Below, piece after piece: positions 7,135 through 25,889 of a DNA stretch of 64,000 nt (the stretch's first letter is position 1; every line of letters starts with the position of its first letter). The DNA comes from Octopus bimaculoides (lineage: Eukaryota). Under the pieces are notes generated by a model. The model worked only from the letters and a program-made list of their open reading frames with translations. It had not been told where the DNA came from and made no database searches. Both the position numbers and the translations under genes were made by a program. The stretch is from positions 93,596-157,595 of the forward strand of contig NC_068994.1 of assembly GCF_001194135.2 (NCBI RefSeq), in the 5' to 3' direction.

Positions 7135-7236
7135 GCTAAAAAAGAGAAGTGTGTATAATAGCTGGACGAATGTAATGGGTGTTGGATTAACTAAACGGAA
7201 GACTCTGACAATAAATGAACGAACCAATTTATCAAG
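7135..7236 (+). CDS. Possible coding exon (LKKRSVYNSWTNVMGVGLTKRKTLTINERTNLS)
   Basis: Acceptor ttctacgcag|G and consensus donor AAG|gtaagt; 102 nt, phase 2-2, no stops. No recognisable domain. Confidence 0.4.
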
Positions 7237-7520
7237 GTAAGTGGTTTATGTGTTTGTCTTTTGATATCACCTCACCTTTTTCCCAATCTGTTTCAAAGAT
7301 GCATTCTAAAGATACAATACATACATACATACATACATACATACATACATACACTTCATTACTTCATTATCACCTTTGAAAGGAAGGAAGTTATCAGTTG
7401 TATACATCCTGCATACATAGAGTACAGCTTGTATATACACTGGAATACGTCAAGTACATTAGTGTGTGTGTGTGCGTATTCTGGAGCACCTTTCGAACTG
7501 TTTATTCTTAAATACGTCAG

Positions 7521-7574
<54 letters not shown>

Positions 7575-7904
7575 GGTTGACAAAATTTCAGGTCAGTTAC
7601 TTAGCTGAAGCTTCGAAGTCGCTGTCAACTTTGTCTGGTTGAAAATAAACTTGGTGCGCTACCTGATATATTGAATAATTCTCCAATTAATGTTTCTTTA
7701 TATATACAACTAAACATTAAGAAAAACAAAACATATTCTAAAGCATCTAAGGTACCCTAGAAAATAGCTGGTGCATAGAGTGAAAAAATGTCACGCACAA
7801 CTGGTATATACTGAAACAGGTGTGTTGTGTATATCTGGGAACATATTTGTTAAAGTTTGTATATACGCAGTAACATTCCGGGTAATCAGAGCTATTGTAT
7901 ATAC

Positions 7905-8070
7905 TAGTGGTTCCCAACCTGTGGTCCGTGGACCCCTGGTGGTCTGCAAAGGTAGTACTGGGGATCCATGAAGACACCCAGTACTACAGACCTTTCAATA
8001 TCCTGGGGTCTATAGGAAAACTCATTTAAATGAAAGGGGTCCTTGGTAGTGAAAAGGTTGGGAACCACTG
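7905..8070. mobile_element. hAT (Charlie-type) MITE
   Basis: TIR tagtggttcccaacct / aggttgggaaccactg; flanks gtatatac and gactacat are only a degenerate match to an 8-bp TSD. Confidence 0.75.
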
Positions 8071-8268
8071 GACTACATCTTTGAAACAGCTGTTCATTCA
8101 CACTAATGAGAACTGTTTGCAATAAGATTAATTCTTTATTTCAGCTGAAGCTTGTTCATAACGACAACACAGACATCTGATTTTCAGTGATGGCTTTACA
8201 TATTAACCCACGGCCAACGTAGTGTGTGTGTGTGTGTGTGTGTGGGTGTGGGTGTGGGTGAGGATGCA

Positions 8269-8306
<38 letters not shown>

Positions 8307-8313
8307 TGTAAAA

Positions 8314-8358
<45 letters not shown>

Positions 8359-8424
8359 TGTACGCACATGTGTGTGTGTGTCGACTTATATATGTGTGAT
8401 AGAATGTGAATATCTTGTTTTTAC

Positions 8425-8624
8425 CTTTTACTTGATTTTGTTGTTAGGCTGTGGCCATGCTGGGGCACCACCTTGAAGAATTTTAGTCGAAAGAATCAAC
8501 CCCAGTACTAATTTTTTAAAAGCTTGTTACTTATTCTGTCGGTATCTTTTGCCGAACCGCTAAGTTATAGGGGATATAAACACACCAACACCGGTTGTCA
8601 AGCAGTGGTAGAGGGCAGGCACAG

Positions 8625-8687
<63 letters not shown>

Positions 8688-8875
8688 ACGGGTAATCTCT
8701 GTGGTTCTGTCCTATGGTTGGAGAGGGTCGATATATCGGATTGGATATTTCAGTTGCGAACACAGAGAAAACTAACCCTATGAGTATTTAGCGCCTCGCA
8801 GTGGTACTGAACCCGGAACCATGTAGTTGGAAAGCAAACTGCTTACCAGATAGCCACACAGTCACGCCTGTGCTT
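8425..8875 (-). mobile_element. SINE family A copy with part of the head replaced by unrelated sequence
   Basis: 3' half at 8425-8625, microsatellite, unrelated 8690-8790, head remnant at 8795-8875. Confidence 0.7.
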
Positions 8876-9075
8876 GCTCATATATATTATATAATATGTA
8901 CACTGTGTGTGTGTGTCCGTGTGTGTGCGCGTGCTTTGTGGCGGTGTGCGACAAATGGCTTAGCTGGTTCTTTAAAGCTGTTTATTGTATAGGTACACCA
9001 TATTGCACCAAAGAGGCGACTAAAAGCGTTGGCACTCAACAAAACACTACACACAAAGTAGAACCATATCCAATA

Positions 9076-9100
<25 letters not shown>

Positions 9101-9106
<6 letters not shown>

Positions 9107-11790
9107 ATAGGGCTTCCTTCGGTCAGAGCTGACCATGGGTAGTATCATTGCTGTTTTCAGCTCAGCCAGAACAGTGTCTCCGGTGACTAAACAGACCTAT
9201 ATGTGGATGACAACCTCTGTCACAGACCACATTTCTATACAGTCTTCGGTCTGTTGCAGTTAATGCGCTCTATTTGCCGGGCTCGCTTGTGTGCTACTGT
9301 ACTCATTAACCTCTTTTCCCCCTGACTTGCGGTGTTCACTCAAGGTGCTCCTCCACGTTGGCCGATCAGCTGGAGGTTCTCCCATTACTCTGCGTTGAAG
9401 ACAAAGACCTTCAAATCTCCTTTTACAACATCCCTGTATTGTAGCCGAAGTCAATGACTCGTGTGAATACCTTGGCGACGATACTGAGAAGGGAGATTCC
9501 CCTGAAGTTGTTGCAGTCGCTTCTTTCACCCTTGGTCTTGTAGAGGGTGATAGTCTTGGAATAACACCTTCTTGCCAGAACTGACAGAAGACCCCATGCA
9601 GTGGCTGCAGTAGGGTAGTCTTGCATTGCTTGATCAGGTCTAGGGGAATCCCATCGCTGCCCGGGGCCTTGCCCGAGACCAAGCCATCTATAGCCTTGCT
9701 AAACTCAGTCAGGGTTGACTCAGCATCAAGCTCTTCCATGATGCCACTCAATGGCATCGAGAGCCGAGTGGGACACAGTGTTCTGTCTGGAGTAGAGGTC
9801 AGAGTAATGTTCCACCCATTTCTCCATCTGCTGACTTCTGTCAGTGATTATTTCCCCACTGCTGAATTTCAGGGGAACTGTCTTGCTCTGAACTGGTCCT
9901 AGTGCCTTCTTCATTCCTCTTTACATGCTTCTGATGTTCCCTGTTAGTGAGGACATCCAGACAGCCGCCCTGAGTTGTGTCCAATACTCACTGGCACAGC
10001 GCCTGACAGTCCATTCTTCTTTGCCTCTGGCAGCCCTGACGATCTGCAGGTTCCTCTTGCTGGGTGGTCGCTTTTACTCAGCTACTGCAGCACGTTTAGC
10101 CGCAATAACAGGGGTCATCTTGATGGACTTGGCCTCAAACCAGTCGCGCGAATTCGAGACCCTCTTTCCAAAGGTAGCCGAGGTTGTGTTGTGCATGATG
10201 TTTCGCAGAATTTCCCACTTTTTTGTGGCAGTCTGCTGGCTGCAAGGTGCAAAGCTCTTTCTTAAAAGCCGCCGTGAATTGCCCTTCATTGTCCGGTTGA
10301 GACATCTTGCTGACATTAAGGCAGGGATTCCCCTGTTTCTTGACTCTATAGAATCTCCTCAGGTGCAGTCGGATTTTACAACACACCAAGGATCACAGTC
10401 TGCACTGTGGTCAGAGCGTGTTGAGAACATTCTTGATGGCGGTACTTCTTATCAAAGTGAGGTCCAGCTGATGCTTGTACTTTGAGTGTGGATGTTTCCA
10501 CACTCAAACCTTGTCTTATGGTTTGGTGCGTAAGTAGGAGTTGGCGATGCACAAGTTGCGTTGGGTACACAAGTTGCGTTGGGTACACAAGTTGCGTTGG
10601 GTGCACAGCTCGAGAAGGTGCTGTCCATTAACACTCATTTTCCCCTCACCAGACTGTCCAAGGTAGGGTGGAAGGCTATGATTCATAATCTACACCCAAT
10701 CTGGTATTGAAATCTCCCAGGCGAATAAGTTGTTCCTTGCTGGGGATGTTGTTGTTGGTGGATGTAAGGTTCTCAGAGAACTTGCCCCTTGTGTCTGATG
10801 TGGCGGACAGTGTCTGTGCATACACACTGATAAGGATCATGGGACTTGTGGTGGTGTTGAGAAGAAGAGTCAGGGGCGTCGCTGAGCTGTCGTTGCCTGG
10901 TTCTGTTCCTCACTGCAAGGCGCACTCCGCGCCCTCTGGGCACGTCTGAGCCATTCCACTGCCAGTAAAACGTGTAGCCCTTTTCCTTCAGTGTACCTGA
11001 GTCTACCAGCCGTGTTTCCTGAAGGGTGGCAATGTCCATATTCAGCCTCTTCAATTCATGGCTGTTTTTCTGTAGTCACTTATGTTCAGTATGTTGTCGG
11101 AAAGGTCGGTTATCTTTGTCCGGACAATCCAAGTTATCTGTTTTAAAGATGGTCGCTTTTGTTGTTTTGCTGTTTTATCTGGTACAGAGTTTGTCGTCTG
11201 TTATTCGGATGGATCCTAATCCTTGTGCATCCAATGAGGAAAGCAGGCAGTGACGGGACAGCACCTTACTAGCTTAAGGTAGGCGATAGCTATCCAGTGA
11301 GATCCGAAAATCTCTTCCACCGTCGGGCGAAACCCCCGGCGCGTTGCCTAACGCCAATGATTGAAACTTTATCGACAGCAACTGCTACTCCCCGTTTTGT
11401 GTCCACGCTGTAGGCGAAGCTGGAGTGTCTTCTCCTGGTGTTCGGTGCGGGTGTGTTGATGAATGATGTGTAGTGGTGGTCGGATCTAAACCTGAGCGAT
11501 GTAGTATGAGGGACAGAATGTTGCCTATGCACAACACTACTGGTTCCAAAAGAACAGCAGGGCTGTTACAGTTTGGCAGCAGCCCTGTCACAAGAGCTGC
11601 CAGAATAAAGTTGCAATCAACGACGAACTGCCGTAGGGGCACCAACTCCGGATTTTTCCGCCGAGATTTACTACTGAAGTCTTCCTATGACTGGGTAACA
11701 CTGCAAAATACCAGAGGTTTGGAGTTAGAGTTTTCCTTCTCCTAGATGGACTGCGTGCCAAGGCTAACGATCTTTGCTTGTCCTCATGTG
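9101..11790 (-). mobile_element. RTE-clade LINE, decayed, with most of the RT deleted
   Basis: APE motif KRLNMDIATLQETRL..SGTLKEKGYTFYWQ (10773-11054); RT start GKAPGSDGIP..TITLYKTKGERSDCNNFRGISLLSIVAKVF; abrupt jump near 9455 to the C-terminal region and CxxC..HIGLFSH finger; 3' UTR ends in a microsatellite; long 5' UTR. Confidence 0.9.
10549..10608. repeat. 18-bp triplication inside the RTE endonuclease region
   Basis: cacaagttgcgttgggta x3. Confidence 0.9.
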
Positions 11791-12570
11791 GTAGGCAGTA
11801 CTGGGTTACATGGTAGCCAGTAGTAGGAAAAAATCAAGGAAATCAGAAAAACCTGACTTGACTGTAACATAGATATGTGCATGCTATTGGATAGCTGTTG
11901 ATTCACATGAGTTCTTCCGCCCTTTGACAGATTTTGTTTTTTATCCTACAGGATGTCCAATAATCACCGTCCTCACCAAGCAAGCCTGGTGGGGTTACCG
12001 ATTTAGTCGCCGACAATCCGATCATGCAACACGTTGTACTAGGTTACTTGTTAGCAGTAGCACTCGGAAGTGACCTGACATATATGTGTGTGTATGGGAA
12101 ATCTATATATATCGTATAAATGTATATCAGGCACGTGCACCACAGCCATATGTGCGCGATATGGTGATCTCTTGTCAAGATAAACAGCACATGACCTTGC
12201 AGGTAAAACCCAGTTAGAATTTTCTCCAGGTCGAGTGCCCATCCCACTCAAAAGGTCCCTGAATAAAGTCCGTTTAAGGATGTTGAACGAAACATTCTTG
12301 TTTTCAAAGGTGAATTATTCAAACGCCAAAGAATTTCTCTCAACACAGCTATGATGCTCCCCCAACTACTTCTGCTCTTGATCAGAGATGCCCATATCGT
12401 CAGCCACTAAGGGACAGGCCAAACAACTGACAAGCAAATCTGTGGTATTGAGCAGAATATTTGCTGTAGCTCGTCTTTTACACCAAAACAAAACATGCAC
12501 ATGATAACACTTTCAATCAGTTAAGATCAGAATCCATGAGAGCCAGCGCTTGGTATTGCATCGGGGCCAA
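11790..12570. repeat. Interspersed repeat 'family C', long copy (possibly a non-LTR 5' UTR derivative)
   Basis: 12125-12565 aligns by eye with 36530-36806; no coding capacity seen; classification is inference. Confidence 0.6.
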
Positions 12571-13349
12571 ATTCCGCCGAGGTCGACTTTGCCTTTCATC
12601 CTTTCGGAGTCAATAAAATAAGTACCAGTTGAACACTGGGGTCGATGAAATCGACTCAATCCCTCCCCCAGAATTGCTGCCCATGTGGGGCAAAAATTGA
12701 AACCATTATTATTATTATATGTTTGGCTTTTGCTTGGTATTTGTACAAAGTTGACTCCAAGTCTCACCCAGAGACCTCAAGAGACAAGAAGTTAGTAGTT
12801 CGAGTTGGTGTTATGACTAGGGTGCCATATTTTTGGTTTTGCACAGAGTTTTATTGTAGAAAGTGTCTGTCAAAACATTTAAGAAAATTAGAAGTTTGTT
12901 TTAAAAGTAATTTGATTATAAGATGATAGTGTGACCTTAGAATGACAGTAAAAGGTGTTTGTTACGTACGTTTAAGAGTACTTTTCACAATACTTACAAT
13001 ATTTTTCGTAGGATAAGAGTAGTTCCCATGGGGTCGATAAATTAAGTACCAGTGAAACATGGGTGTCAATGTAATTGACTAGTCCCCTCCCACTCAAATT
13101 TCAGGCTTTTAGTAGAAAGGAGTATTATTATTATTATTATTAGTAGTAGTAGTTATTGTTGATGGTCGCAAGTCAAAACTGGTCCTGTAAATTACTTCGA
13201 AAATATTTTGTCCCTGACCGTCCTGTCATATTGCATATTTAAGGCAAGACACCAGCACTACAAGCGAGGGAGGAGTCCTAACTGAAAATTCATTACTTCT
13301 ATCCCTCCACACTGAAAATAACAATTCTGCCCATTGTTTTCTTGCTTTT

Positions 13350-13392
<43 letters not shown>

Positions 13393-13874
13393 AAACAAAG
13401 TTCCAATCTCAAATTCTCTCAACATCCTTTGAAATCCTTTAAAGTCTATGTCGATGACCTCCTCTTCCCGGCCTATTTCCCAAGTAGGTCCCTTTTGCTC
13501 CTTGATAATTCTGTCCATTCTCCCCTTCAGTTATTCTCATTATTTTTCCTTATCAAAAAGATTTCTCAATAAAATCTACCATTTCTACACCCAAGCCTAT
13601 TTTTCCAAATTTCAATAAAATATTTAAAACCTAATGCTTGCATCATCGAACTCAGCTTCCCTCTTTTCCTACCAATTATCATATTTCATTCCTTCGATGT
13701 CCTAACCTAGTTTTGTAGAAAAACAAAACAAAGTTACTATAAAAATTGGAATATTATTTTGGTAAAATTTCAAGGAGAAAGATCAACAGAAACGTGAATA
13801 TCAAATGATCTTTGTTGACAAATGGGCAGCGGCAGGCATGGTTATGGTTCTAGGTTCCAACACACTGCACGACA

Positions 13875-13892
13875 ATTTATATATATGTATGC

Positions 13893-13924
<32 letters not shown>

Positions 13925-14358
13925 ATATATATATTTGTATATATGTATGTATGTGTATATATGTATGTATGTGTATATATATATATATATACGTATATAT
14001 ATGTATGTGTATATATATGTATATATGTATGTGTATATATATGTATATATGTATGTGTATATATATGTATATATGTATGTGTATATATATTTGTGTATAT
14101 ATGTATGTATATATGTATGTGTATATGTGTGTGTATATATATATATGTATCTATTTGCATATATATATGTATATATTTGTATATATATATATGTNNNNNN
14201 NNNNNNNNNNNNNNNNNNNNNNNNNNNNNNNNNNNNNNNNNNNNNNNNNNNNNNNNNNNNNNNNNNNNNNNNNNNNNNNNNNNNNNNNNNNNNNNNNNNN
14301 NNNNNNNNNNNNNNNNNNNNNNNNNNNNNNNNNNNNNNNNNNNNNNNNNNNNNNNATC

Positions 14359-14396
<38 letters not shown>

Positions 14397-14450
14397 CAAA
14401 TATATATACATATGTGTGTGTGTGTGTGCGTGTGTGTGTGTGTGTGTGTG
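13875..14450. repeat. Compound (TA)/(TG) microsatellite block spanning an N-gap
   Basis: Read directly. Confidence 0.95.
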
Positions 14451-14452
14451 TA

Positions 14453-16277
14453 TCAGGTTGAGTAAAAAGTAAGCAACGTTTTGAACCATGGAGAATTTGT
14501 ACCGGATTTTTGCAGTTTTGAATTTTAGCAATTGCCTGATAATCCATAGACTTACCCAAATGCATCAATAAATTAACACTGATATTTTCTCACCGTTGTT
14601 ACAATCATGTCGACCTGTTCGTGTCTGTTTGTCCGTTGTTCAAGAGGTTAGTAAAAGGATTATTGAATTGTGTTTATTGTTAATTGTGGTGTCTTTTAAC
14701 ACTTGTGTTTGCTTCCTTGCGGCAGTTTTGTTGACGCTGTTCCCCTTATTTGAAGTGGGTAGCGTTGTTTGGAAAAAAATGATGAATTATGAAAACTTTC
14801 AGCTCCTCAGAATTCTCTTCGGAGGAGGAGGAGGAACTGATAAAAGCTCTGGACAATGCAGACAAGAAGATGGATTTCGCGACGGTGGCCAAAAGCCACC
14901 AAAAAACAGATTAAATTGGAGGAAATTGGTAGAAATACTAAGGGACGGATACAATGTGAAGGTATCCCCTCCCTAAGAAGCAATACAGGGTGAAAAAGAA
15001 AAAATTGTTTATAGAACATTTTCGGTAAAGAACAGGAAGGTCGATGACGGTTGCACAGATTGAAAAGGATTTAAAACAAATATGGAGAGGTTGTGTGTAC
15101 CTCAGCAGAGGCCGAAAGTTTGGAACTGAGGAGGTGCGGTTCCGAGATGCAGCGACCGCCAGCCTACACTCGGCAACCCCTTTAAAAGCGCGATATTCGA
15201 GCAATGTTGCTATTCAACTTCAAAAAATGACATAAAGCAGCTGAAACTACTCGCGATACGAACGAAACGTTTGGTGAGGAAATGACCAGCGAGTGGTCAG
15301 CTGGAAAACGGTTTGAACGATTTCGCAGTGGAGACCTGAGCCTTGAAGATCGGGAGCGCAGTGGACGGCCATCTGTCATCGATGGCGGTCAATCAAAGAC
15401 TGTCATCGATGGCGGTCAGTTAAAGACCGTCATTGAGAAAGACCCACGTAAAACCGCTCGAGAACTGGCAAAAGAACTTTAAATTAGCCAGAAAACTACC
15501 TGCAACAATTTGCATGCGATCGGAAAATCAAAACTGCTCGACAAATGGGTACCATACGATTTGAATGAAAGTCAGAAAATGCGCAGATACGAAATTTTCG
15601 CGTCGCTTCTTCTCTGTTACCAGACCGATCCATTTCTCGACCGTATTTTAACTTGAGATGAAATGTGGATCCTGTGCAAAAAAAAAAAAAAACATTCTTA
15701 ACAGTGGTTGGACCAAAATGAAGCACCGAAAACCTTCCCTAAACCGTCAAACAGAAGGTTATGGTGAGTGTTTGGTGGTGTACTGCTGGACTCATCCAAT
15801 ATAACTTCTTAAAACCCGGAAAAAAACATTACTGCAGAAACATACTGCCAAAATGAACGATAAACTGCTACTTCTCCATCGTCCCAGAATGGTTAACAGA
15901 AGAGGGCCAATCCTTCTTCATGACAATGCCCGACCACACGTTTCACTAATGACGCTTCAGAAGTTGAGGGAACTTGGCCACGAAGTTCTTCCCCACCCAG
16001 CTTATTCCCCAGACCTTTCACCTACTGACTACCACACTTTCAAGCACCTTCATGGTTTCCTGCGTGAGAAGGAGTTCAAAAATCAAACCGATGCTGAAAA
16101 TGCGTTCAAAGAGCTGATCAACTCCAGATTTTTATGTTACCAGAATAAACAAACTTGTAACTCGTTGACAAAAATGTGTTGGTTGTAACGGTACTTACGT
16201 TGATGAATAAAATTTCCGAATTGTTGAAATATATTGTGATGAATTTCATGTTTCAAAACGTTGCTTACTCAGCCTGA
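14453..16277 (+). mobile_element. Mariner (DD34D) with both TIRs, pseudogenised transposase (~15180-16210) and a nested insert in the 5' region
   Basis: TA|tcaggttgagtaaaaagtaagcaacgttttgaaccatg matches the reverse complement of 16243-16277; EDRERSGRPS; HDNARPH...YSPDLSPTDYH with 34-residue spacing; 27-bp in-frame duplication near 15370-15430. Confidence 0.9.
14630..15180 (+). mobile_element. Nested insert in the mariner: probable 5' UTR plus ORF1 start of a non-LTR (Tx1/L1-like) element
   Basis: Decayed ORF MKTFSSSEFSSEEEEELIKALDNADKK...GIPSL...YRTFSVKN...YLSRGRKFGTEEVRF; accounts for the ~500 bp excess over a normal mariner. Family call is inference. Confidence 0.45.
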
Positions 16278-16329
16278 TGTATATGGCAGGTTAAAAGGTG
16301 TGTAACTCAATAAAGATATGCTCAAAGCA

Positions 16330-16730
16330 AAGCTAGACAAGACCTTATGCGGTAGTCTCTTCAGTAGCGCTGGCCTACCTGTGCTGTTATAGAGAAGTGG
16401 GTTACTATGAATAGGGAAGAACATCGATTGGCTACGATGCAAAGTGCCATGGAAAGATATATGTTAGAAATACGAGAGCATATCCGAAATAATGAGACGA
16501 CTCTAGAACGGAGCGGAATAAACAAAGCAATCGTAGAATAGCGAAAGCTCAAGTTCCGTCGTAATGTTCACAAACAACAGGTGGAGCCGTTCAGTTGCCG
16601 ACTGATATCTAAGAGATCGGGAAAGGCCTCCATGATGATGGGAAGACGATTTAGTTAAGCGATTTGGAACAAGATAGAAAAGAATGACGCAATCAAGAAA
16701 GAATCGGAAAAGCATTGTGACCAGGGATAT
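16330..16730 (+). mobile_element. RTE-clade LINE, C-terminal fragment
   Basis: Degenerate LFSS..LPVLL..EEHRLATMQSAMERYML..EHIRN..RSG..NNRWSRSVADW..RPP..WEDD. Confidence 0.65.
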
Positions 16731-17225
16731 ATAGCAACATAGTCTGATCGATACAGATGTGTGTGTGTGTGTGTGTGTGTCTATGCATATATGTACTGGA
16801 ATATTTAAAACTGGATTCTGAGATGTCCATACATCTTAGCTATTTTTTGTCAACGCCATATTTTACTGTTTTATTCCTCGCTCGCATTAGCATATGAGTT
16901 TATCAAAACTCACCATTTTGCTCATATATATGTGTGTGTGTGTGTGTGGAAATTAGTCATGTTGTGATGAAACATCGACACGAAACCTTGCCTAATGACC
17001 CACTGAGATACAAACACACACGCGCACACATGCATACATACACGCGCGCGCGCACGCATCAAGTCCTTGTCTTTGCAAAGGTAAGAGAGTTGGGAGGGAA
17101 ACGAGAAAGGCACTTATGGTAGCGCTGTGTCACAGTGAGTTGGTGTCGGCTTCGTAATTCATTAAATCTTAATTGGTGAGGAAATAGAAACTTGACTATC
17201 AGTCTCCCAGAATAAGGAAATAACA

Positions 17226-17266
<41 letters not shown>

Positions 17267-17903
17267 CGAGAGAGAGAGGGGGAAGGAGAGGGCTGGCGGC
17301 GACGGCGGCGACAGAATATGTCATCATGTGTAAGAAGAAAGTTGTTATTTAGCCCTGAGTCAAGCTGATCGACCAGGTATATTATGATCAAAGGTGTTCC
17401 TTTCGTGATCATCTCGACTTTTTGCATATTCAATTGTGCATTGCCAATATCATTCTGCTTTTAAACGATGAGAGTTTGACTGTTGTTTCTTGCATGCCGT
17501 TAGACTACGTAGAAAACGCTTGTCCTGTTAGAAATAACAGTCAAATCCGACCTATTTGATTGGTTTGAAGAGAGAAAGTGAAAGACGTCAGAGATAAAAT
17601 ATAACAAAACAGCCCCTCAAGTGGTGTCAAGTTTTGAGGGGTGGGGGTTAGAATGAGAAAGACCATAGTTGACTAATCTCGTCAACCACTCACATCTCTT
17701 CGACTTTAATTGAAATCAAATTACTACATGCATTAATTAAGAGAGCTAGAAAGATAGACATACTCATCTCACTAAAGAGACTGGCAAATATATAACTAAG
17801 TTAATATTAATATTTAATTTAACTAAGTTAATATTAATATTTAATTTATGGAGCATAAAGATATCTAGCTAGAAATATGTAGCGAGATAGACGGATAGGC
17901 AAA

Positions 17904-17966
17904 CAGGGTGGCAGGGTGGCAGGGTGGCAGGGTAGCAGGGTGGCAGGGTAGCAGGGTGGCAGGGTG
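17904..17966 (+). repeat. 8-bp tandem repeat (CAGGGTRG) x ~8, G-quadruplex motif
   Basis: Eight GGG runs with 5-nt spacers, read directly. Confidence 0.9.
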
Positions 17967-18679
17967 TCGGTAAGGCAGGCATTTCAGAATATGTTGTGGT
18001 TGATGGTGTTTCGAACAAAGTCATCTCTGATCGATCTCACCTTTTATCAGAAAGGTTCCAGCCGTGACTAACCCGTCTTTCTTGGCGTACGTGGGACATG
18101 TGTCCTTCCCATTTTTAAGACGGTGTATTTTGAGGAAGATATAACTACTATTTCAAGCAAATCTATTGAACACGTTGTACCACCTCTCCTTACGGCCATT
18201 TATTGGATGGGTGAAATCGGTGTAAGAAAGATCAAGGGTAGTGGTCTTTATGGATTTACATAAACCTCTGTAATAAGCAACCTTGGAATTTTACTTTTCC
18301 CTGATGCTACCGAAAATGTCTAGAGTAAATACTTTGGCCGTACAATTGAGCAGCAGACTAAAGTATTTTGAAGTACGACTGAGAATAATAAAGTACAAGT
18401 GAAGGCCAGTGAAGAAAAAATGTTTTATAGTTTGTTTATAGCATCTCTAAAATTTGGTGGATTTGTTCAATAGGTTTGTTAATGGAGTCAGAGCTAAGCA
18501 AAAGTAAGGGGATAGAACGAATCTCCCAGTCTTAGCTGGTTTTAATTATATTCTTTTTGCCTTGTTTGCATTATGCCTGACTCTAGATATGTAGCCTGAC
18601 TCTAGTAACTAAGAGTGAAATATAAAGATTCGTTTCCTTCTTACTGCTTTCTATAATAATTCGGTTCATTTCTACCTGT

Positions 18680-19525
18680 TGTATTAGTATGAAATTCTGC
18701 TTGAAATCGGAAAAACTTTTACGGAAACTTTTCAAATATTGCAATGGGTGCAAAGGGAAGATTATTTAAGTAGTGCGCAACGTGGCGAGTGATGCCAGCA
18801 TTTTAATTGGAAAGAACAGCCACTGAAACGCTCCTACGACGATCATATTGTGAAAGTGCAGCTGTAATCCTTGACAATCGTCACTTGAGTGTCTTTGATG
18901 TTTCCGAAGAAGTAATGATCTGTAAAAATTCATGTCACATAATCTTAAAAGAAGAAACGATGGAGAGTCCTGTTGCCGCAAAATGTGTTAACAGAAACTG
19001 AACAGAGTTGCAGTTAATCGTGAGTTTTTTGATCGTTTGAATATCTATGAAAACTTTCTGAAAAGTCATAATAATTATCGAAACGTGGGTGTAAGACTAT
19101 GATATTGAAAGAAAAAAGATAGTTGCCATAGAAGGGTCGATGGTCAGCATTGCAACCAAACGAAAACACGTTAGATTTATTCTGGTGTTGATCGTCTTTT
19201 CGTCTCAGTTCGTTCCATGGGGTTCAGACAGTCACTAAAGAGTTATGTTTGTCCTGGAGCATTAACATAGAAATGATGCGAAAAAAAAAGGGGGGGGGAC
19301 TGAGGTATAGACAATGAAAAGCTGCAAGCTGCACAACGCTCAAGCCTCATTCCTTATCCGTAATGGTTTGACAAGTACGAGACAGCACTCATCTCTTAGC
19401 CTTTCTACATCACGGATTTGACCCTGAAGGACTTTTCGATTCCTAAATGCATCTTCAATTCAGAAGTTAGAAGAGATCGAAGACAATTCGCAGCAAGAAA
19501 CAAGTACTAATCAAGACGTTCCAGA
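18680..19525 (+). mobile_element. Highly decayed mariner transposase remnant
   Basis: Fragments KFC..IGKTFTETFQILQ, NRHLSV.DVSEEV.I.K.SCH.IL, ETWV.DYDIE and degenerate HDNA / SPDL motifs across frameshifts. Confidence 0.65.
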
Positions 19526-19530
19526 ATTTG

Positions 19531-19571
<41 letters not shown>

Positions 19572-21489
19572 TGTGTGNNNNNNNNNNNGGGGGGGGGGGT
19601 ATCTTGAAGGAGACAAATCTGATTAAATTATAAACAGCATTTTCTCAAAATTTGGAGCTCCTTCGAACAGAAGGCGCGTGTGAAGTTTAGCTCACACACT
19701 TACACGGCTTCTGTCTACATAACAGAAATAGTTGTCTAAATGAGATATTGAAACGGACTTATAATAGATTGAAGAAATATTTGGGGTGACACTGGCGATA
19801 TATATCCCCGGCTTACATTACACGGTTACTATAGAAACTACATTATTGCTACAGTCGCTACACTGCTGATACAATCACAACACGGACCTGGATAAAGTTA
19901 CCAAAATTTTTGGGAATGTGGATTGGTGGGACAACGCCCGTTGTGTACTGTTTCACAATAGACTTTCAATGTCTATTGTGTATTGATGTTTCTTTTATGC
20001 TGTGTGGGAGCAATTGCAGATAGAACCACTGTTAACAATATGAAACGTATTATAAATGATTCTTGATTGGACCCACACGTATAATAGATGATAACCAGAT
20101 TGGGGTCACATGTATCATATATGATCCTACATCGGACTCACGTGTATTACATATCATCTCCAATTGGGGTCATATGGTCGCAGATCTAAGATCACGTATA
20201 ATATATACTCTGCAGTCTGTGGAAACTTGTATCTCTCTGTCTTTTTGTCTAAACTCCTTCGTTTACGGTTGTTTAACTTCTTCTGCAAGTTGATCTTATT
20301 GTCTTTGTTGGCTGCTTTTATGATTCAACATTTCTTTCATGTGGCATTTTCTATCTGTCCACCGTCATTGCAGTTTATCTGATAAGTAAGCTATAACAAT
20401 GGAGGATATTAACGCTCAGTGGGAAATGGTGGTGGTAGTGACGGTAAGAACAATGATGATGATGATGATAACAAACGTGTGTGATCTTGTTTGATGTTTG
20501 ATTACTAAATTGTATTGGTAAATATGTCTCGTTAGGAGTGACAGGTGAAATGATTGACCGGCTAACTACTTGCCTAGCCCCTGTCTGTATCTTATGTTTT
20601 TTTATCTGTCGGGTTGTATTGTTCCACAAACATGAATATAATTATTGTGCAAAGTAGAATCTAAATAGAAAGACAAGAAGAGACAGGTTTAAATGAGTGA
20701 AGTAACCAGCTTCTAAATGTGACTTTTGACAGAACTGTGTTGTTAGGACAGTGGGGCTGATATAGTATTAGTTAGATGGAGTAGTGCACCTCTAGACTAC
20801 AAGTTACGAGTTCATATCCTAGTACAGTCATCGCTGACGTTGTGTTCGTTGGTAAAAAAAAAATATTGTATCTATTGACAACCATGTCTAAACAGACCTG
20901 GTTGTATTGTTGTTTAACCCCAGGCCAACCCTGACCGAGCACACCTATGATCAAAGACATTCCAGCCACGACCATTCTCTCCTTTTAAAACGCAGTTAAT
21001 CTAGGATAACATTAACGTGATCCTCATTTCAGTCGGGCATTTTAAAGATTTTTTTTTTATTTGGGAAATTTGGTTATTTCTAGCCACTTGAGCTACCGAA
21101 GTACTTCAGGGCATCAGCGTTTACCACACTAATATCTATTTAGCTCGACCTTGATTCTGTCCACAGAGAAATGTTAAAAGTGATAGAACTTGCAGTTTGT
21201 CTACGTGAAAGTTTATCTCTCAGCCGCACACCACAACAATGAGAACCAAATCTAAGTACATTTCCCTCTTACCTTTGGCTTTAGACCCAAATCAATCCTG
21301 ATCGAGATAATCCATATTCAAAAGCATTCCATCCATGACGGTCTTGGATAGTACACCACAGATCACATTACGAAGTATCTCTTATTTTTAAGATATTAAG
21401 GTATAATTTAAGAGAGATGCAGCTACTATTTCTAGTAGGTTAGGGTTATCTCAGTGGTTTACTAGCTTTATCAGTCTCGTCTGTTTCAG

Positions 21490-21528
21490 ACTCCTGCGAA
21501 AGTTCTGCTCACTGCATCTTCCGCTTGA
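21490..21528 (+). CDS. Possible 39-nt exon just upstream of the SH2 domain (LLRKFCSLHLPL-E)
   Basis: Acceptor gtctcgtctgtttcag|A and donor GA|gtaaat; phase 2-2, compatible with both 7236 and 22962. Confidence 0.25.
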   Translation, partial: TPAKVLLTASSA

Positions 21529-21999
21529 GTAAATTTATTTAAAAAATCTGCTCAGCAGACCGCAAGAGTTCGTAAAAAGATCCGCTCAGACATCCGATCA
21601 GATAGTGTATCTAAAATTACTATCTAATGTGATTTTTGTTTAAGATGGCTAATTGTGATTTGAGTGATCTTTGCTACTGTTTCTAGCGGGTTTGTTTTAC
21701 TCAGAATATGGAAAAATAGAAAATCCTCCTAAAAAATCTAATGAAAGTGTGTAAAAAGTTTTAGCTTCCTTGAAACCAGTTTCAATGTTATTCCTTACTA
21801 AAAACCAATTCCTGTGGTTTTCTCTATTCAAAAGTTCCACAAGGACGATTCCATATCTTTCCATTTCCCTTAATGTTATATTCGTATTTACTTTTATATG
21901 GACGACATTAAAATTAGGTGTGGTTTTAATTCCGTTTTTTTATTCTATAGCTAAACCTGAAAAATTCTGTATTACTTTGGTGTAGGATCTACAAATTAA

Positions 22000-22577
22000 A
22001 AGGCGATTACTTTAGGTTACTTTTTAGTTTATTTTTCAATTTCTAAAAAACCCTTAAGATGTTCTTGTGTCTCTAGCAGATGTTCGCTCAATTCATCGAC
22101 AAAATTATTCAAATTTGTATTTCATCTTTATTATCAAATTACTATTCAAATGTTTTATGAATTCTTTTGTACATACTTAGCATTGTAAATGTATTTTTTT
22201 CAAAATTCTTACTATTTTAATAATAATAAAACCATGTTTCATTTATGTCTAAGTAAATAATAAAATAAAAACAAGAATAAACAATATGGTAATTAAAAAT
22301 AAGCGTGTAGATCACACAGGTTTGACAGCTGCGAGTTTTGCAATGTAAAGTTGGCAAAATTTCACCGTTTTTCCCTTTACTTCGAGCTTCCTTCATTTCG
22401 CCATCACAACGATGATATGGTGCAACATTTTGTTCGTCATCTAAAAGGTCATTTCTTCGTAAAAATACAACAGCCTTCGTCTCGTCGCTGATCGCATTGT
22501 AAAAATCTTTAGCCAACAACTTAAGAGCTTTTAGAAATTGAAAAGTAAACTAAAACGTAACCTAAAGTAATCACCCT
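22000..22577 (-). mobile_element. 578-bp TIR element (~60-bp TIRs, TTAA flanks) carrying a transposase N-terminal remnant resembling Merlin/IS1595
   Basis: 22000-22062 aligns to the reverse complement of 22515-22577; TTAA at 21996-21999 and 22578-22581; ORF 22519-22217 FYNAISDETKAVVFLRRNDLL...HRC.GEM...LHCKTRSCQT. Confidence 0.75.
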
Positions 22578-22810
22578 TTAAGCTGGAGATAACACGCCAA
22601 AGTAGGACCAAAAATTCTATATTGTGAGGTTAAGAATTTTACTTCATAATCACGTTATTTTGTATACGAACTCACTGTCTTGTACAATGGACAAGAGTCT
22701 CTCTCCTACCGTAACCTTGTCAACCAAATACTTGTCCGTTAATCTCCGTAGTCAGAAATTATGCAGAAACTCATTGAGTTGGTCCGTATCAATTTTTGGA
22801 CGGTAGACTT

Positions 22811-22864
<54 letters not shown>

Positions 22865-22961
22865 GCTAGCTAGTTGTTTACCCACTTGCACTATCTGTCT
22901 ACCATGTCTAATTAATTACTGGTATTTACAGACATTTTACATTGATGGCAATATTTTTCAG

Positions 22962-23078
22962 GATCAACCCAATATCTTTCGGAAAGTACGAAGCAGAGAT
23001 GGCGCTCAAAGACACATCACCTGGAACCTACCTGATGTACAAGGATTATGAATCTAACCAAATTTATCTCTCTGTCAG
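22962..23078 (+). CDS. Coding exon, N-terminal half of an SH2-like domain (xINPISFGKYEAEMALKDTSPGTYLMYKDYESNQIYLSV-R)
   Basis: Acceptor atatttttcag|G and donor TCAG|gtaaag; 117 nt = 1+38 codons+2, no stops; resembles SH2 alphaA-betaB-betaC (EAE..L....GT[F/Y]L.....[Y]LSV). An in-frame alternative acceptor exists at 22932. Confidence 0.8.
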
Positions 23079-23339
23079 GTAAAGATCTTCATTATAGTCT
23101 GTCTTTGTGAGAGAGAGCTTAAACTGGTTGGATGTTACATTTGTGGGGGGGGGGGGATATACGAACTGAAGACTACCTTTATATGTAGTGCAGTTCCCTC
23201 TCTGAGGCAACAGACTGGATATTAACTTCTCACCAGTAATAGCCAAATGAAAAACGTGGGGTCTAAGCACCTAATTCTCCTAAATTTCTGTAGATTGTTT
23301 AACCCTAGATTTACTTTGATTTCACAGACCTCTCCTTTA

Positions 23340-23515
23340 TTTTTTAACTTGTTTCAGTCATTAGAGTGAGGTCATGCTGTGACGCCACCTTGAAGGATTT
23401 TAGTCAAACGAATTGGGCCCAGGACTTATTCTGTTGGTGTCTTTCTTGAATCGCTAAGTTATGGACGCATAAACTCATCAAAACCGGTTGTCAAGCTGTG
23501 GTGGGATACATACAC
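23340..23515 (-). mobile_element. SINE family A, 3' half
   Basis: acttgtttcagtcatt...gctaagtta...ggttgtcaagc matches the reverse complement of the 33300-33470 tail. Confidence 0.7.
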
Positions 23516-23749
23516 TCTCTCTCTCTCCCTCTCTCTCTTTCACTCACTAACACACACACACACATTATCGGTCGCACATACATAGTGTATGTATTTTTTT
23601 TTCTTTATAAGGCGAAGAAAATTAGATAACGAATAATTGCAAAATATCGCTATCATTTTCGGTGATTCCGAAGCGAGTTCTCACAACCAGTCTGTGACAT
23701 TCAGGTGTTGTTTAACTCCTGAATGTCATGTAGGATGCTACTTGGATGT

Positions 23750-24066
23750 AGAATACACTTCAGCCTTCATCAGGTGACTTGGGGAAATTTCGAAACTGGG
23801 TTCTCATTCCTAATTCCTCATTCGATGCGAACTTGGAATCTTAACCACTACACCATACGCACGTGAGCAATTACGGAGTGAATTTTAGGGCTTACAAATC
23901 TAATATTCTCCTATCCTTCCTTAATACCGGTTCCTATATGCTGCTCATATCTGCACTCAGACTGTTTAGGAGGTTGTTGTGTCCTAGCATATGTGCTGCT
24001 TCTTTTAGTTTTCGTATTTTCCAGTGATGTTCTCTGTCTATTATTTTTAACTTCATCCCACAGGGG
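23750..24066 (-). mobile_element. Penelope-like element 3' remnant: GIY-YIG C-terminus, tRNA-like segment and half hammerhead
   Basis: PLWDEVK/IIDREHHWKIRKLKEAAHMLGHNNLLN..S.DMSSI*EPVL (24066-23892); A-box-like TGGTGTAGTGG downstream; CCTGATGAAGGCTG at ~23773-23760. Confidence 0.7.
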
Positions 24067-24129
24067 GAGGGTTAATATAGGTAATTTTTTTCTTTATAGC
24101 CTGCTTTAAGTAAGGCAGAGTTATAACGG

Positions 24130-24355
24130 ACGGTTTGACTGGAGACTGGCAAGCTAGGAAGCTGCAATCTGATTTGGCAATGTTTCTACAGCTGGATGCC
24201 CTTCCTAACGCCAACCACTACGAGAGTGTAGTGGGTGCTTTTTACATGGAGCCAGTCGGGGTGGGGGGGACGGCATCGACCACATTTGGCTGATGCTTTT
24301 TATGTGCCACCAGCACGGGGAGCCAGTCAGGTGGCACTGGCAGTGACCTAATGCC
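24130..24355 (+). repeat. Interspersed retroposon-derived repeat fragment
   Basis: Contains ctggatgcccttcctaacgccaaccac and an internal direct-repeat structure; family unassigned. Confidence 0.4.
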
Positions 24356-24797
24356 CAATATATACAGACAGTAGACTATAAGCTAATGCAGATTTGGCAG
24401 TTATTTCTAGCAACACCAATGACCATATGGGTGATATATGTTATTATTCTATGCAATGGCAGCACTATTGAACTTCAGAATGTTGCCATTTTTGACTTCA
24501 ACATCTGGCCTCTGGATGATTTTTAGTTTGTGCAGTTTAAGTTTTCCTTTTGTGAGCATTGATTGAAAAAACTTTCAACTATAGACACAAGGCCTGAAAT
24601 TTTGTTTGATTGGGCTAAGTCAATTAATTAACCCCAGTGCTTAACTGGAACTTATTTTATCGACCCTGAAAGGATAAAAAACGAAGTCAACCTTGGTGGC
24701 TTTACCTTAATATTTGCCAATATTAATTGCTGTAAATAGTTATTTTCTGCAAAATGTTAGTTTCTTTCTCCTAAATTGCATTTTGTCTATTCTTCAG

Positions 24798-24939
24798 AAC
24801 TGACAGTGTGTTGCGACATCATATGGTCACACAAAGTGATGGTCTGTTCTATCTGGACAAACAACCCTACCCGTATCTCGATTCTATCGTACTTTACCAC
24901 AAAAAGCATAAACTCCATGGTATCAAATTAACACAACAG
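24798..24939 (+). CDS. Coding exon, C-terminal half of the SH2-like domain (TDSVLRHHMVTQSDGLFYLDKQPYPYLDSIVLYHKKHKLHGIKLTQQ)
   Basis: Acceptor ttttgtctattcttcag|A and donor CAG|gtaaat; 142 nt = 1+47 codons; the phase matches the previous exon (AG|A = Arg); SH2 betaD-betaE-alphaB pattern (HH.V.Q.DG.FYL....[F/Y]..L.S.V.YH....L.GI.L). Confidence 0.85.
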
Positions 24940-25520
24940 GTAAATCTTTAGCTTTCTTCCTCACTACTTTCAAACATTTTCATTCATTAATGTTGTTCAT
25001 GTTGTTTAGACCCAGATTATTCTTAATCCAGGAGCCATTTGATCAAAAGTATTCCTATTCGACCATTCTGTCTTTTATTAAAAAATAGTGAATCTATGAT
25101 CAATATATTCCAGCCATGACAAATCTTTCTATTCAGAAATACTGTCATTTTGTTTTTATGTTGTTGTCTGATTCAACAAGCCTATGATTAAAACTATTCC
25201 AAATGCATCTCTCTTTTTTACAGGTATAGTGTAACTAGGAATATATGACCTATTATGTAGCTGTCAGTATCAGTGGTTCCAAGAGACATATTGCAATGTG
25301 ACCAAAACTTTCTCTTTCCAGAGTTTAACCAGGATCACATTATCACTCAATATGGCCTTCCTTTTTATGTTTGTAGGTTTTTGATTTGAGCGAGTTTTAG
25401 TTGTTACTTCTAATAATTTGAGCAACTGCTTAGAAACAAGTTGACTCATAATGTTTGCTTGAAAAATTTATGTAAATAGTGAGATTTGTTGATATTAGTA
25501 AATATTTCCTCTGTTTTTAG

Positions 25521-25637
25521 GCTCCGCTGAGTGCCAGAATTGTGAAATGCTTTGCTGCAAGATTTGCTGCCAACAATGGCAACATTCTGCCTCAGAAAAC
25601 TGAAGATAAAAACAAAATGCTTGAAGAGACATTATCT
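25521..25637 (+). CDS. Coding exon after the SH2 domain (APLSARIVKCFAARFAANNGNILPQKTEDKNKMLEETLS...), runs into an N-gap
   Basis: Acceptor tttcctctgtttttag|G; phase 0 matches the upstream donor; open to the gap. The donor is not visible. Confidence 0.65.
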
Positions 25638-25842
25638 NNNNNNNNNNNNNNNNNNNNNNNNNNNNNNNNNNNNNNNNNNNNNNNNNNNNNNNNNNNNNNN
25701 NNNNNNNNNNNNNNNNNNNNNNNNNNNNNNNNNNNNNNNNNNNNNNGTGCACGCGCACATTAGTGTTAAAGAAATTGTTTCTACTTAATCTGTATTCTCA
25801 ATTAAAATTATTTTTTCACTTGTTTGTTGTTTATTATTTCAG

Positions 25843-25889
25843 TTGATCAACGTTATGATTTAGACATAAGCAGTTGGTCAACATCTTAA
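25843..25889 (+). CDS. Probable terminal coding exon of the SH2 gene (xDQRYDLDISSWSTS*)
   Basis: Strong acceptor ttgtttgttgtttattatttcag|TT; the phase-1 reading is open to TAA. Phase cannot be confirmed because the previous donor lies in the gap. Confidence 0.45.

What the first reader, a model, noticed from the sequence alone, without database searches (positions are those of the whole stretch)
22962..25889. Spliced gene for an atypical SH2 domain lacking the FLVR arginine
Seen: two phase-matched exons with consensus splice sites join to give ...INPISFGKYEAEMALKDTSPGTYLMYKDYESNQIYLSVRTDSVLRHHMVTQSDGLFYLDKQPYPYLDSIVLYHKKHKLHGIKLTQQ, followed by a short tail. This spliced product is absent from the ORF track because it is split by introns. 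Established: SH2 domains bind phosphotyrosine through the betaB5 Arg of FLVRES. Here the aligned segment reads YLMYKD (Arg to Tyr), and the N-terminal WYHG motif is also divergent. Inference: a small SH2-fold adaptor that probably does not bind pTyr canonically, possibly lineage-specific.
Basis: partly seen in the sequence, partly recalled or inferred. Interest (0 to 1): 0.75.

Follow-up and report, generated by a model that had tools for sequence, protein, structure and literature searches.

The report
Membrane-anchored SH2 protein lacking key arginine
This is a real, spliced octopus gene for a 148-residue protein made of a lipid-anchor signal plus one SH2 domain whose phosphotyrosine-binding arginine is replaced by tyrosine, and it belongs to an old, uncharacterised animal family that never has that arginine.

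Summary
Their joins match a RefSeq protein of Octopus bimaculoides (XP_052828945.1, LOC106883693) and intron-free contigs that look like transcripts from a related species.

Two corrections are needed:
- **Missed first exon.** It lies 15.7 kb upstream at 7175-7236 and encodes MGVGLTKRK..., an N-myristoylation motif.
- **The "short tail" to 25889 is not coding.** The reading frame ends with Arg-Leu-stop inside the N gap. In O. sinensis the same place reads CGT TTG TAA followed by a GT microsatellite.

The protein is an SH2 domain by family profile and by predicted fold. Tyr sits where the FLVR arginine should be. In 32 relatives from molluscs, chelicerates, amphioxus and anthozoans this position is Tyr (20), Ser (11) or Phe (1), never Arg. 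The neighbouring Asp and the betaD4 His are invariant. A centipede fragment also matches the family but was not in that alignment.

So this is not an error, an allele or a pseudogene, and it is not lineage-specific. My best reading is a membrane-tethered single-SH2 adaptor whose pocket no longer binds phosphotyrosine in the canonical way. The ligand is unknown. No paper on the family was found.

The parts
7175..7236 (+). Gly2 (7178-7180), Thr6 and Lys7-Arg8-Lys9 make an N-myristoylation motif followed by a basic patch. The donor site is AG|gtaagt.
   Evidence: tblastn with orthologue P0001; sequence; identical to the N-terminus of XP_052828945.1; fits PROSITE-type pattern G-{EDRKHPFYW}-x(2)-[STAGCN]-{P}
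7237..22961 (+). Intron 1, 15.7 kb. It contains transposon debris and three assembly gaps.
   Evidence: Exon coordinates; the O. sinensis orthologue has a 24.7 kb intron at the same place
22962..23078 (+). Coding exon 2: last base of Arg21, then INPISFGKYEAEMALKDTSPGTYLMYKDYESNQIYLSV and two bases of Arg60. Covers SH2 betaA, alphaA, betaB and betaC. Lys29 is at alphaA2. Tyr47 (23038-23040) is at the FLVR arginine position betaB5. Asp49 (23044-23046) is at betaB7.
   Evidence: alignments to PLCgamma1, VAV2 and RasGAP SH2; position counts
24798..24939 (+). Coding exon 3: TDSVLRHHMVTQSDGLFYLDKQPYPYLDSIVLYHKKHKLHGIKLTQQ. Covers SH2 betaD to alphaB and the BG region. His67 (24817-24819) is at betaD4. 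The block QPYPYLDSI is the most conserved in the family.
25521..25637 (+). Coding exon 4, visible part: APLSARIVKCFAARFAANNGNILPQKTEDKNKMLEETLS. It includes a predicted amphipathic helix (residues 112-125) that is conserved in molluscs only. The frame runs open into the gap.
25638..25746 (+). Assembly gap. It hides the last two codons (Arg-Leu), the stop codon and probably a (GT)n microsatellite.
   Evidence: P0043 is the window product plus RL. O. sinensis reads TCT CGT TTG TAA AGGAAAAT(GT)n here, about 70 bp, with both flanks collinear
25747..25889 (+). 3' UTR, not coding.
   Evidence: Stops in all three frames soon after the gap. The supposed tail ORF is disrupted by a deletion in O. sinensis. 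It is absent from the newer RefSeq model and from all orthologues

Best explanation
A four-exon gene (Octopus bimaculoides LOC106883693) encodes a 148-residue protein with three parts:
- an N-terminal Met-Gly...Thr myristoylation signal followed by a basic patch;
- one Src-type SH2 domain;
- a short helical tail ending in -Ser-Arg-Leu.

It belongs to an old, uncharacterised animal family. In that family the phosphate-clamping arginine (betaB5, the R of FLVRES) is always replaced: by Tyr in 20 of the 21 bilaterian sequences aligned (Phe in one) and by Ser in anthozoans. The residue two places on (betaB7, normally Ser/Thr) is always Asp. The ring-packing His (betaD4) and the EF-loop/alphaB face stay strictly conserved.

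**Most likely mechanism (inferred, not shown).** The protein is lipid-anchored to the inner face of a membrane. It uses an intact SH2 peptide groove to bind a conserved partner without canonical phosphotyrosine recognition, because the pocket has lost its key positive charge and gained an invariant negative one. It would then act as a small membrane-tethered adaptor or competitor.

**Shown here:** gene structure, the signs of transcription in a relative (intron-free contigs), purifying selection, SH2 homology and predicted fold, the residue pattern and the taxonomic spread.

**Inferred:** myristoylation, membrane location, loss of phosphotyrosine binding and the adaptor role.
For: **Gene structure**
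- Searches give the exons. The product is identical to RefSeq P0043.
- Intron-free orthologous contigs occur in 14 and 126 assemblies of public sequencing runs.
- O. sinensis has the same four exons, with Arg-Leu-stop at the place of the gap.

**Selection**
- Octopus against the related species' transcript contig: pN 0.17 against pS 0.79, which is saturated.

**SH2 identity**
-.

**Pocket pattern in 32 sequences**
- betaB5: Tyr 20, Ser 11, Phe 1, Arg 0.
- betaB7: Asp 32/32.
- betaD4: His 32/32.
- BC loop: net charge negative in 28 of 32, zero in 3, +1 in 1.
- alphaA2: Arg/Lys 26/32.

**Lipid anchor**
- 29 of 32 sequences carry Met-Gly at or near the predicted start, and 25 fit the myristoylation pattern.
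- Most also carry a second membrane signal: Cys at position 4, 5 or 7, or Lys-Arg-Lys.
- The three without Met-Gly look like truncated or mis-started gene models.

**Family boundary**
- Only 34 proteins reach E<=1e-3 among 1.84 billion representatives. Ordinary Arg-bearing SH2 proteins appear only at about 1e-3.

**Background**
- Among human SH2 domains, only RIN2, TYK2 and SH2D5 lack the FLVR arginine (PMC7530234).
Against: - No binding, lipidation or localisation experiment exists.
- alphaA2 is still Lys/Arg in most members. betaD6 is Arg in 13 of 32 (not in octopus, where it is Met). A non-canonical phosphate contact, as in the p120RasGAP C-SH2, therefore cannot be excluded.
- Bivalve members start MGFG..., and Phe at position 3 is disfavoured by the myristoylation pattern.
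- Transcripts of a related species include an isoform with a different N-terminus and no Met-Gly (P0062), so not all products would be anchored.
- The window protein alone falls just under Pfam's SH2 cut-off.
- The structure is a prediction, and I could not inspect its coordinates.
Confidence: 0.6

Rival explanations
1. The domain still binds phosphotyrosine, through other basic residues (alphaA2 Lys/Arg, betaD3 or betaD6 Arg, betaB6 Lys/Arg). This would resemble the "FLVR-unique" C-terminal SH2 of p120RasGAP, which holds phosphotyrosine without using its FLVR arginine.
For: - alphaA2 is Arg/Lys in 26 of 32 sequences, betaD6 is Arg in 13 of 32, and the betaD4 His is invariant.
- RasGAP SH2 domains are the best sequence and fold matches.
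- The precedent is described in PMC7530234.
Against: - No alternative basic position is conserved across the family. betaD6 is Met in octopus, Trp or Ser in the other cephalopod-like sequences, Ala in 10 of 11 anthozoans and variable in arthropods. betaD3 ranges over Arg, Glu, Val, Ala, Lys, Gln and Cys.
- The invariant Asp at betaB7 and an acidic BC loop put negative charge where the phosphate would sit.
Confidence: 0.2
2. It is a SOCS-like protein: an SH2 domain followed directly by a C-terminal SOCS box that recruits Elongin B/C and a cullin, so that bound partners are ubiquitinated.
For: - The tail starts right after the SH2 domain, is about 42 residues long, ends the protein and begins P-L-S-A-R-I-V-K-C-F, which loosely fits the BC-box pattern L-x-x-x-C-x-x-x-hydrophobic.
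- SOCS1 and SOCS2 give the longest Foldseek alignments, 111-131 columns.
Against: - There is no Pfam SOCS_box match even at E<=10.
- A profile of the mollusc tail finds no SOCS or other BC-box protein among solved structures.
- The SOCS alignments have rmsd of about 12 A.
- The key Cys/Ser/Ala position is Ile, Val or Thr, and there is no Cul5-box LPxP.
- The tail is conserved only within molluscs.
Confidence: 0.04
3. It is a decaying or mis-assembled SH2 gene: a pseudogene, an allele or a sequencing error at the FLVR codon.
For: - The window is a draft assembly with ten N gaps.
- The window protein alone is just below Pfam's cut-off.
Against: - The frame is intact across four exons with canonical splice sites.
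- The protein is identical in the newer assembly's RefSeq model.
- Tyr, or Phe or Ser, occupies this position in all 32 relatives across about five phyla or subphyla.
- pN is far below pS.
- Intron-free contigs that look like transcripts occur in many sequencing runs of a relative.
Confidence: 0.01

Closest known systems
Canonical Src-type SH2 domains (best matches: p120RasGAP N- and C-SH2, PLCgamma1 C-SH2, VAV2, Nck, Crk, Grb2/Gads)
   Same: - Same predicted fold: alphaA, betaB-betaF, alphaB, with rmsd 1.6-1.8 A over about 90 residues.
- Conserved betaD4 His, Gly before betaB, and the alphaB Tyr.
- Profile E-values down to 2.6e-11.
   Different: - betaB5 is Tyr, not Arg.
- betaB7 is Asp, not Ser/Thr.
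- The BC loop is acidic.
- There is no Trp at betaA1 in the octopus protein.
- It is not embedded in a multidomain enzyme or in an SH3-containing adaptor.
Human SH2 domains that lack the FLVR arginine: TYK2 (His), RIN2 (His), SH2D5 (Trp)
   Same: - The key arginine is replaced while the fold is kept.
- For TYK2 and the JAKs, the groove is used for phosphotyrosine-independent binding of a receptor tail (PMC7530234).
   Different: - The replacement residue is different.
- No specific sequence relationship was detected.
- Those domains sit inside large multidomain proteins. This one is essentially the whole protein.
- Here the replacement is fixed across a whole family spanning several phyla, together with an invariant Asp.
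SAP / EAT-2 (SH2D1A, SH2D1B): free single-SH2 adaptors of about 130 residues
   Same: - Same architecture: one SH2 domain plus a short tail.
- From my own knowledge, SAP can bind its ligand without tyrosine phosphorylation, and it acts as an adaptor and competitor.
   Different: - From my own knowledge, SAP keeps the FLVR arginine and is not lipid-anchored.
- SAP is not among the 60 best hits shown in the profile search of solved structures, so there is no sign of special kinship.
SLAP / SLAP2 and Src-family N-termini (from my own knowledge: myristoylated, sometimes palmitoylated, SH2-containing proteins)
   Same: An N-terminal Met-Gly lipidation signal with a second membrane signal (basic patch or Cys), placed upstream of an SH2 domain.
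   Different: Those proteins have an SH3 domain, a canonical SH2 pocket and either a kinase domain or a Cbl-binding tail. None of these is present here.

Membership tests
SH2 domain (Pfam PF00017) | Significant match to the SH2 sequence profile | tested here: met
- 20 of 32 family members match at E<=0.01, best 7.4e-7.
- The family profile hits 134 solved SH2 sequences and nothing else in the 60 best shown, with a best E of 2.6e-11.
SH2 domain (Pfam PF00017) | SH2 fold: a central antiparallel sheet flanked by helices alphaA and alphaB | tested here: met
   - AlphaFold2 with 32 sequences gives a mean pLDDT of 79.5, with 10-residue block means of 84-95 for residues 21-110. The predicted elements are H29-36, E43-48, E55-60, E65-73, E76-79, E82-84 and H87-96.
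- Foldseek against the PDB gives 175 hits at E<=1e-3. The top 50 are all SH2-containing entries.
- This is a prediction, not a solved structure.
SH2 domain (Pfam PF00017) | Arg at betaB5 (the FLVR arginine) that clamps the phosphate | tested here: not met
   - The window has Tyr47 there.
- Among 32 relatives the counts are Tyr 20, Ser 11, Phe 1 and Arg 0.
- This residue defines canonical function rather than the fold. A few accepted SH2 domains also lack it (PMC7530234).
SH2 domain (Pfam PF00017) | Supporting pocket residues: alphaA2 Arg, betaB7 Ser/Thr, betaD4 His | tested here: inconclusive
   - alphaA2 is Lys in the window, and Arg/Lys in 26 of 32 relatives.
- betaD4 is His in 32 of 32.
- betaB7 is Asp in 32 of 32, instead of Ser/Thr.
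SH2 domain (Pfam PF00017) | Binds phosphotyrosine peptides | not testable with these tools
   This needs a binding assay with the purified domain.
SOCS family (SH2 plus SOCS box) | C-terminal SOCS box (BC box plus Cul box) | tested here: not met
   - No Pfam SOCS_box hit at E<=10.
- The tail profile finds no SOCS or BC-box chain in the PDB.
- The Foldseek SOCS alignments have rmsd of about 12 A.
N-myristoylated proteins | Met-Gly start that fits G-{EDRKHPFYW}-x(2)-[STAGCN]-{P} | tested here: met
   - The window protein starts MGVGLTK, which fits the pattern.
- 25 of 32 relatives fit, and 29 of 32 carry Met-Gly at or near the predicted start.
- This is a match to a sequence pattern only. Whether the lipid is actually attached was not tested.
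Class I PDZ-binding C-termini | C-terminal [ST]-x-hydrophobic residue | tested here: inconclusive
   - Cephalopods end in -SRL (inside the gap in the window; taken from P0043).
- Bivalves end in -SHL, -THL or -TYL, one spider paralogue in -SHV, and others in -TRL or -TRM.
- Several gastropods (-QRL, -ATS, -ASS), amphioxus (-NLV) and anthozoans (-AVK, -VKS) do not fit.

The most novel reading that the evidence does not exclude
An ancient family, predating the bilaterians, of lipid-anchored single-SH2 proteins in which the phosphotyrosine pocket has been rebuilt rather than lost. Tyr/Ser at betaB5, an invariant Asp at betaB7 and an invariant His at betaD4 would then read something other than phosphotyrosine, for example a basic or unmodified residue in a conserved membrane partner. 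That would make it an SH2 lineage with a new ligand chemistry. It appears to be missing from vertebrates, insects and nematodes.
Probability: 0.3. Interest if true: 0.7.

Novelty: new variant of a known kind. Interest (0 to 1): 0.5.

Why it matters
SH2 domains are the textbook readers of phosphotyrosine, and almost all of them depend on one arginine. Only three of about 120 human SH2 domains lack it (PMC7530234).

Here a whole family, conserved from corals to amphioxus, has never been seen with that arginine. It carries an invariant acidic residue in its place, yet keeps the rest of the binding face under strong constraint. That pattern points to a working domain with a different ligand, not a dead one.

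The family offers a natural test of how far SH2 recognition can move away from phosphotyrosine. It also marks a small membrane-anchored signalling component that the standard model animals appear to have lost.

For genome annotation, it corrects the first exon and the C-terminus of the old octopus gene model.

Tried and rejected
- **SOCS-box reading of the tail.** Rejected: no profile or PDB sequence support.
- **AlphaFold with only three sequences.** It gave an unusable model (pLDDT 49.6). I repeated it with 32 sequences.
- **3' UTR of the related species' transcript contig.** Too diverged from the window to bridge the gap. The O. sinensis genomic locus did bridge it.
- **Look-up of the O. 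bimaculoides protein in the new assembly.** It returned no DNA, because the annotated gene spans 228 kb. The Patella protein was not on record.
- **Alternative exons.** The exons seen in isoforms of other species (P0004 cassette, P0062 alternative N-terminus, P0042 alternative C-terminus) have no convincing match in the window.
- **Species of the Logan runs.** Searching papers for the run accessions found nothing, so the species behind P0001 is unknown.
- **Literature searches.** Searches for a myristoylated SH2 domain or one without the FLVR arginine in invertebrates found nothing on this family.
- **tRNA scan.** Nothing found in the window.
- **Model coordinates.** They were not available to me, so I did no pocket geometry or electrostatics.
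Full report
**1. What is in the sequence**

The window is animal DNA with long introns, microsatellites and ten N gaps.
- 22962-23078, bounded by ...ttttcag|G and CAG|gtaaag;
- 24798-24939, bounded by ...cttcag|A and CAG|gtaaat;
- 25521 onwards, after ...ttttag|G.

The phases match, and the spliced peptide is letter for letter the one quoted.

A search of the window with an orthologue found a fourth, earlier coding exon at 7175-7236. It reads ATG GGT GTT GGA TTA ACT AAA CGG AAG ... TCA AG|gtaagt and lies 15.7 kb upstream. Its last two bases join the G at 22962 to make Arg21.

The assembled product is:
MGVGLTKRKTLTINERTNLSRINPISFGKYEAEMALKDTSPGTYLMYKDYESNQIYLSVRTDSVLRHHMVTQSDGLFYLDKQPYPYLDSIVLYHKKHKLHGIKLTQQAPLSARIVKCFAARFAANNGNILPQKTEDKNKMLEETLS, followed by the gap.

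**2. The gap and the tail**

Exon 4 runs in frame into the N run at 25638-25746. The window's product equals residues 1-146 of XP_052828945.1, the 148-residue Octopus bimaculoides LOC106883693 model from the newer assembly. That model adds only Arg-Leu.

In the O. sinensis locus (L007) the same four exons are present. The sequence opposite the gap is about 70 bp: TCT CGT TTG TAA AGGAAAAT followed by a (GT)n run. The flanks on both sides align with the window.

So the two sides of the gap are continuous. The reading frame ends nine bases into the gap, and a microsatellite probably caused the gap.

It is coding only in the old model XP_014790290.1 (159 aa...EETFDQRYDLDISSWSTS), which jumped the gap. 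The supposed tail is not preserved in O. sinensis.

**3. Is it a real, working gene**

Contigs of about 1.6 kb from a related species carry the orthologous reading frame without introns. Each has a 5' leader of about 0.2-0.3 kb and a 3' trailer of about 0.9 kb. The two allelic forms were seen on 14 and 126 contigs. Nucleotide similarity to the window stops exactly at the exon borders.

Between the two species the proportion of nonsynonymous differences is 0.17. That of synonymous differences is 0.79, which is saturated. This indicates strong purifying selection. A pseudogene, an allele or a sequencing error is excluded.

**4. What it is**

- At family level the case is firm. 20 of 32 relatives match SH2, best E 7.4e-7.
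- A profile of the family hits 134 distinct solved SH2 sequences, led by p120RasGAP, VAV2 and PLCgamma1 (E 2.6e-11 to 1e-9).
- An AlphaFold model built on 32 sequences has a confident core. Ten-residue block means of pLDDT are 84-95 for residues 21-110, with the SH2 order of helices and strands.
- The model superposes on SH2 crystal structures at 1.6-1.8 A over about 90 residues. All 50 top Foldseek matches are SH2-containing entries.

**5. The pocket**

Three independent alignments put Tyr47 opposite the FLVR arginine: GTYLMYKD against GAFLVRKR, GTYLIRE and GSYLIRES.

Counts in 32 relatives:

| Position | Residues |
|---|---|
| betaB5 | Tyr 20, Ser 11 (all anthozoans), Phe 1, Arg 0 |
| betaB7 (normally Ser/Thr, which hydrogen-bonds the phosphate) | Asp 32 |
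| betaD4 | His 32 |
| betaD5 | His 30 |
| alphaA2 | Arg 17, Lys 9, other 6 |
| betaD6 | variable; Met in octopus |

The BC loop carries a net negative charge in 28 of the 32 sequences.

The longest conserved block is FYLDKQPYPYLDSIVLYHKKHKL. It covers betaE, the EF loop, betaF and alphaB, which is the face that shapes ligand specificity in ordinary SH2 domains.

My reading is that the peptide groove is under constraint, while the phosphate clamp has been replaced by a conserved, more acidic arrangement. This is an inference from sequence. I could not inspect model coordinates.

**6. The ends of the protein**

*N-terminus.* 29 of 32 relatives carry Met-Gly at or near the predicted start, and 25 fit the myristoylation pattern. 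The three without Met-Gly look like truncated or mis-started models. For example, Mytilus californianus has ...FRMGFGASKQ inside an extended model.

Most members also carry a second membrane signal:
- Lys-Arg-Lys in cephalopods;
- Cys4 in gastropods (MGGCLTKSS);
- Cys5 in amphioxus and anthozoans;
- Cys7 in spiders.

This two-signal layout is what is seen in Src-family kinases and G-alpha subunits (established knowledge). It argues for membrane anchoring.

*C-terminus.* Molluscs share a helix, A-x-LSAR-x-VK-x-F...NGN. It looked a little like a SOCS BC box, but no profile or PDB sequence search supports that.

Several lineages end in Ser/Thr-x-Leu/Val (-SRL, -SHL, -THL, -SHV, -TRL), the form of a class I PDZ ligand. 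Others do not, so this stays a lead only.

**7. Distribution**

A profile search of 1.84 billion representative proteins found only 34 hits at E<=1e-3. Ordinary Arg-bearing SH2 proteins appear only at the very bottom of that list.

Named members come from:
- cephalopods, gastropods, bivalves and a chiton;
- spiders (two paralogues), scorpions, a horseshoe crab and a centipede;
- three Branchiostoma species;
- sea anemones and stony corals, as a divergent branch with Ser in place of Tyr.

No vertebrate, insect, nematode or echinoderm member was found. All members are annotated as uncharacterised. UniProt's automatic label for some is "SH2 domain-containing protein". Three literature searches found nothing on the family.

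**8. Verdict**

It is wrong about the start of the gene and about its 3' end.

It fails on lineage specificity.

The most likely function is a membrane-tethered single-SH2 adaptor or competitor that binds its partner without the canonical phosphotyrosine clamp. The main rival is retained phosphotyrosine binding through other basic residues, as in the p120RasGAP C-SH2 (PMC7530234). It is weakened by the lack of any conserved substitute and by the invariant Asp.

This is a new variant of a known kind of domain. It is of moderate interest and easy to test.

Noticed in passing
window 25638-25746, and gene model XP_014790290.1 (P0006): The old O. bimaculoides gene model bridges the assembly gap with a non-canonical join. 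This gives a false C-terminus (FDQRYDLDISSWSTS) read from 3' UTR. The newer model ends ...LSRL. In O. sinensis the gap region holds a (GT)n microsatellite, which is a likely cause of the gap.
   Followed up: yes
window 15853-16188 (+), inside intron 1: A 111-residue ORF with a mariner/Tc1-like transposase signature (...HDNARPH...SPDLSPTDYH...). It has only a weak Pfam DDE_3 match (E 0.0087, below the cut-off), so it is probably a decayed transposon fragment.
   Followed up: partly
window 56173-57102 (+): A 309-residue ORF with a clear reverse-transcriptase domain (Pfam RVT_1, E 1.2e-24). It is most likely a fragment of a non-LTR retrotransposon, about 30 kb downstream of the SH2 gene.
   Followed up: partly
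window 9260-9757 (-) and 9925-10485 (+), inside intron 1: Two ORFs of 165 and 186 residues in a stretch richer in G+C (0.44-0.49). Neither has a Pfam match. They may be degraded repeat-element coding sequence.
   Followed up: partly
window 7170-7177: An upstream ATG at 7170 is followed at once by TAA. It sits five bases before the real start codon, which has A at -3 and G at +4. This makes a minimal one-codon upstream ORF.
   Followed up: no
related proteins P0009, P0010, P0011, P0014, P0058, P0094 (bivalves): Bivalve members carry a C-terminal extension of 130-200 residues. It has a conserved block (IEHTND...RISKSSGRLW.SG...SLKR.S) and a conserved end (-ILYCSHL or -VYDTHL/-TYL). Cephalopods lack this extension.
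   Followed up: no
related protein P0060 (Crassostrea virginica LOC111106011, 574 aa): The family SH2 region is fused in this gene model to a C-type lectin domain (PF00059) and a transmembrane-like tail. The family's usual C-terminus (...VYDTHL) lies in the middle of the model, so it is probably two neighbouring genes merged by the predictor.
   Followed up: no
related transcripts P0004, P0062, P0063 (Logan contigs from cephalopod-like species) and P0042 (O. vulgaris): Isoforms exist with a cassette inserted between exons 1 and 2, with an alternative N-terminus that has no Met-Gly but puts a Trp just before the SH2 domain, and with an alternative C-terminus. No matching exons were found in the window.
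   Followed up: partly
spider proteins P0015/P0103 (146 aa) and P0096/P0100 (about 170 aa): Spiders have two paralogues of the family at separate loci, for example two loci each in Uloborus diversus and Argiope bruennichi.
   Followed up: no
window 22813-22861 and 25940-25973: A perfect (TC)24 run lies 100 bp upstream of exon 2, and a (GT)17 run lies in the 3' UTR region. The window as a whole is rich in dinucleotide and ACAT-type microsatellites, and several of them flank the N gaps.
   Followed up: partly
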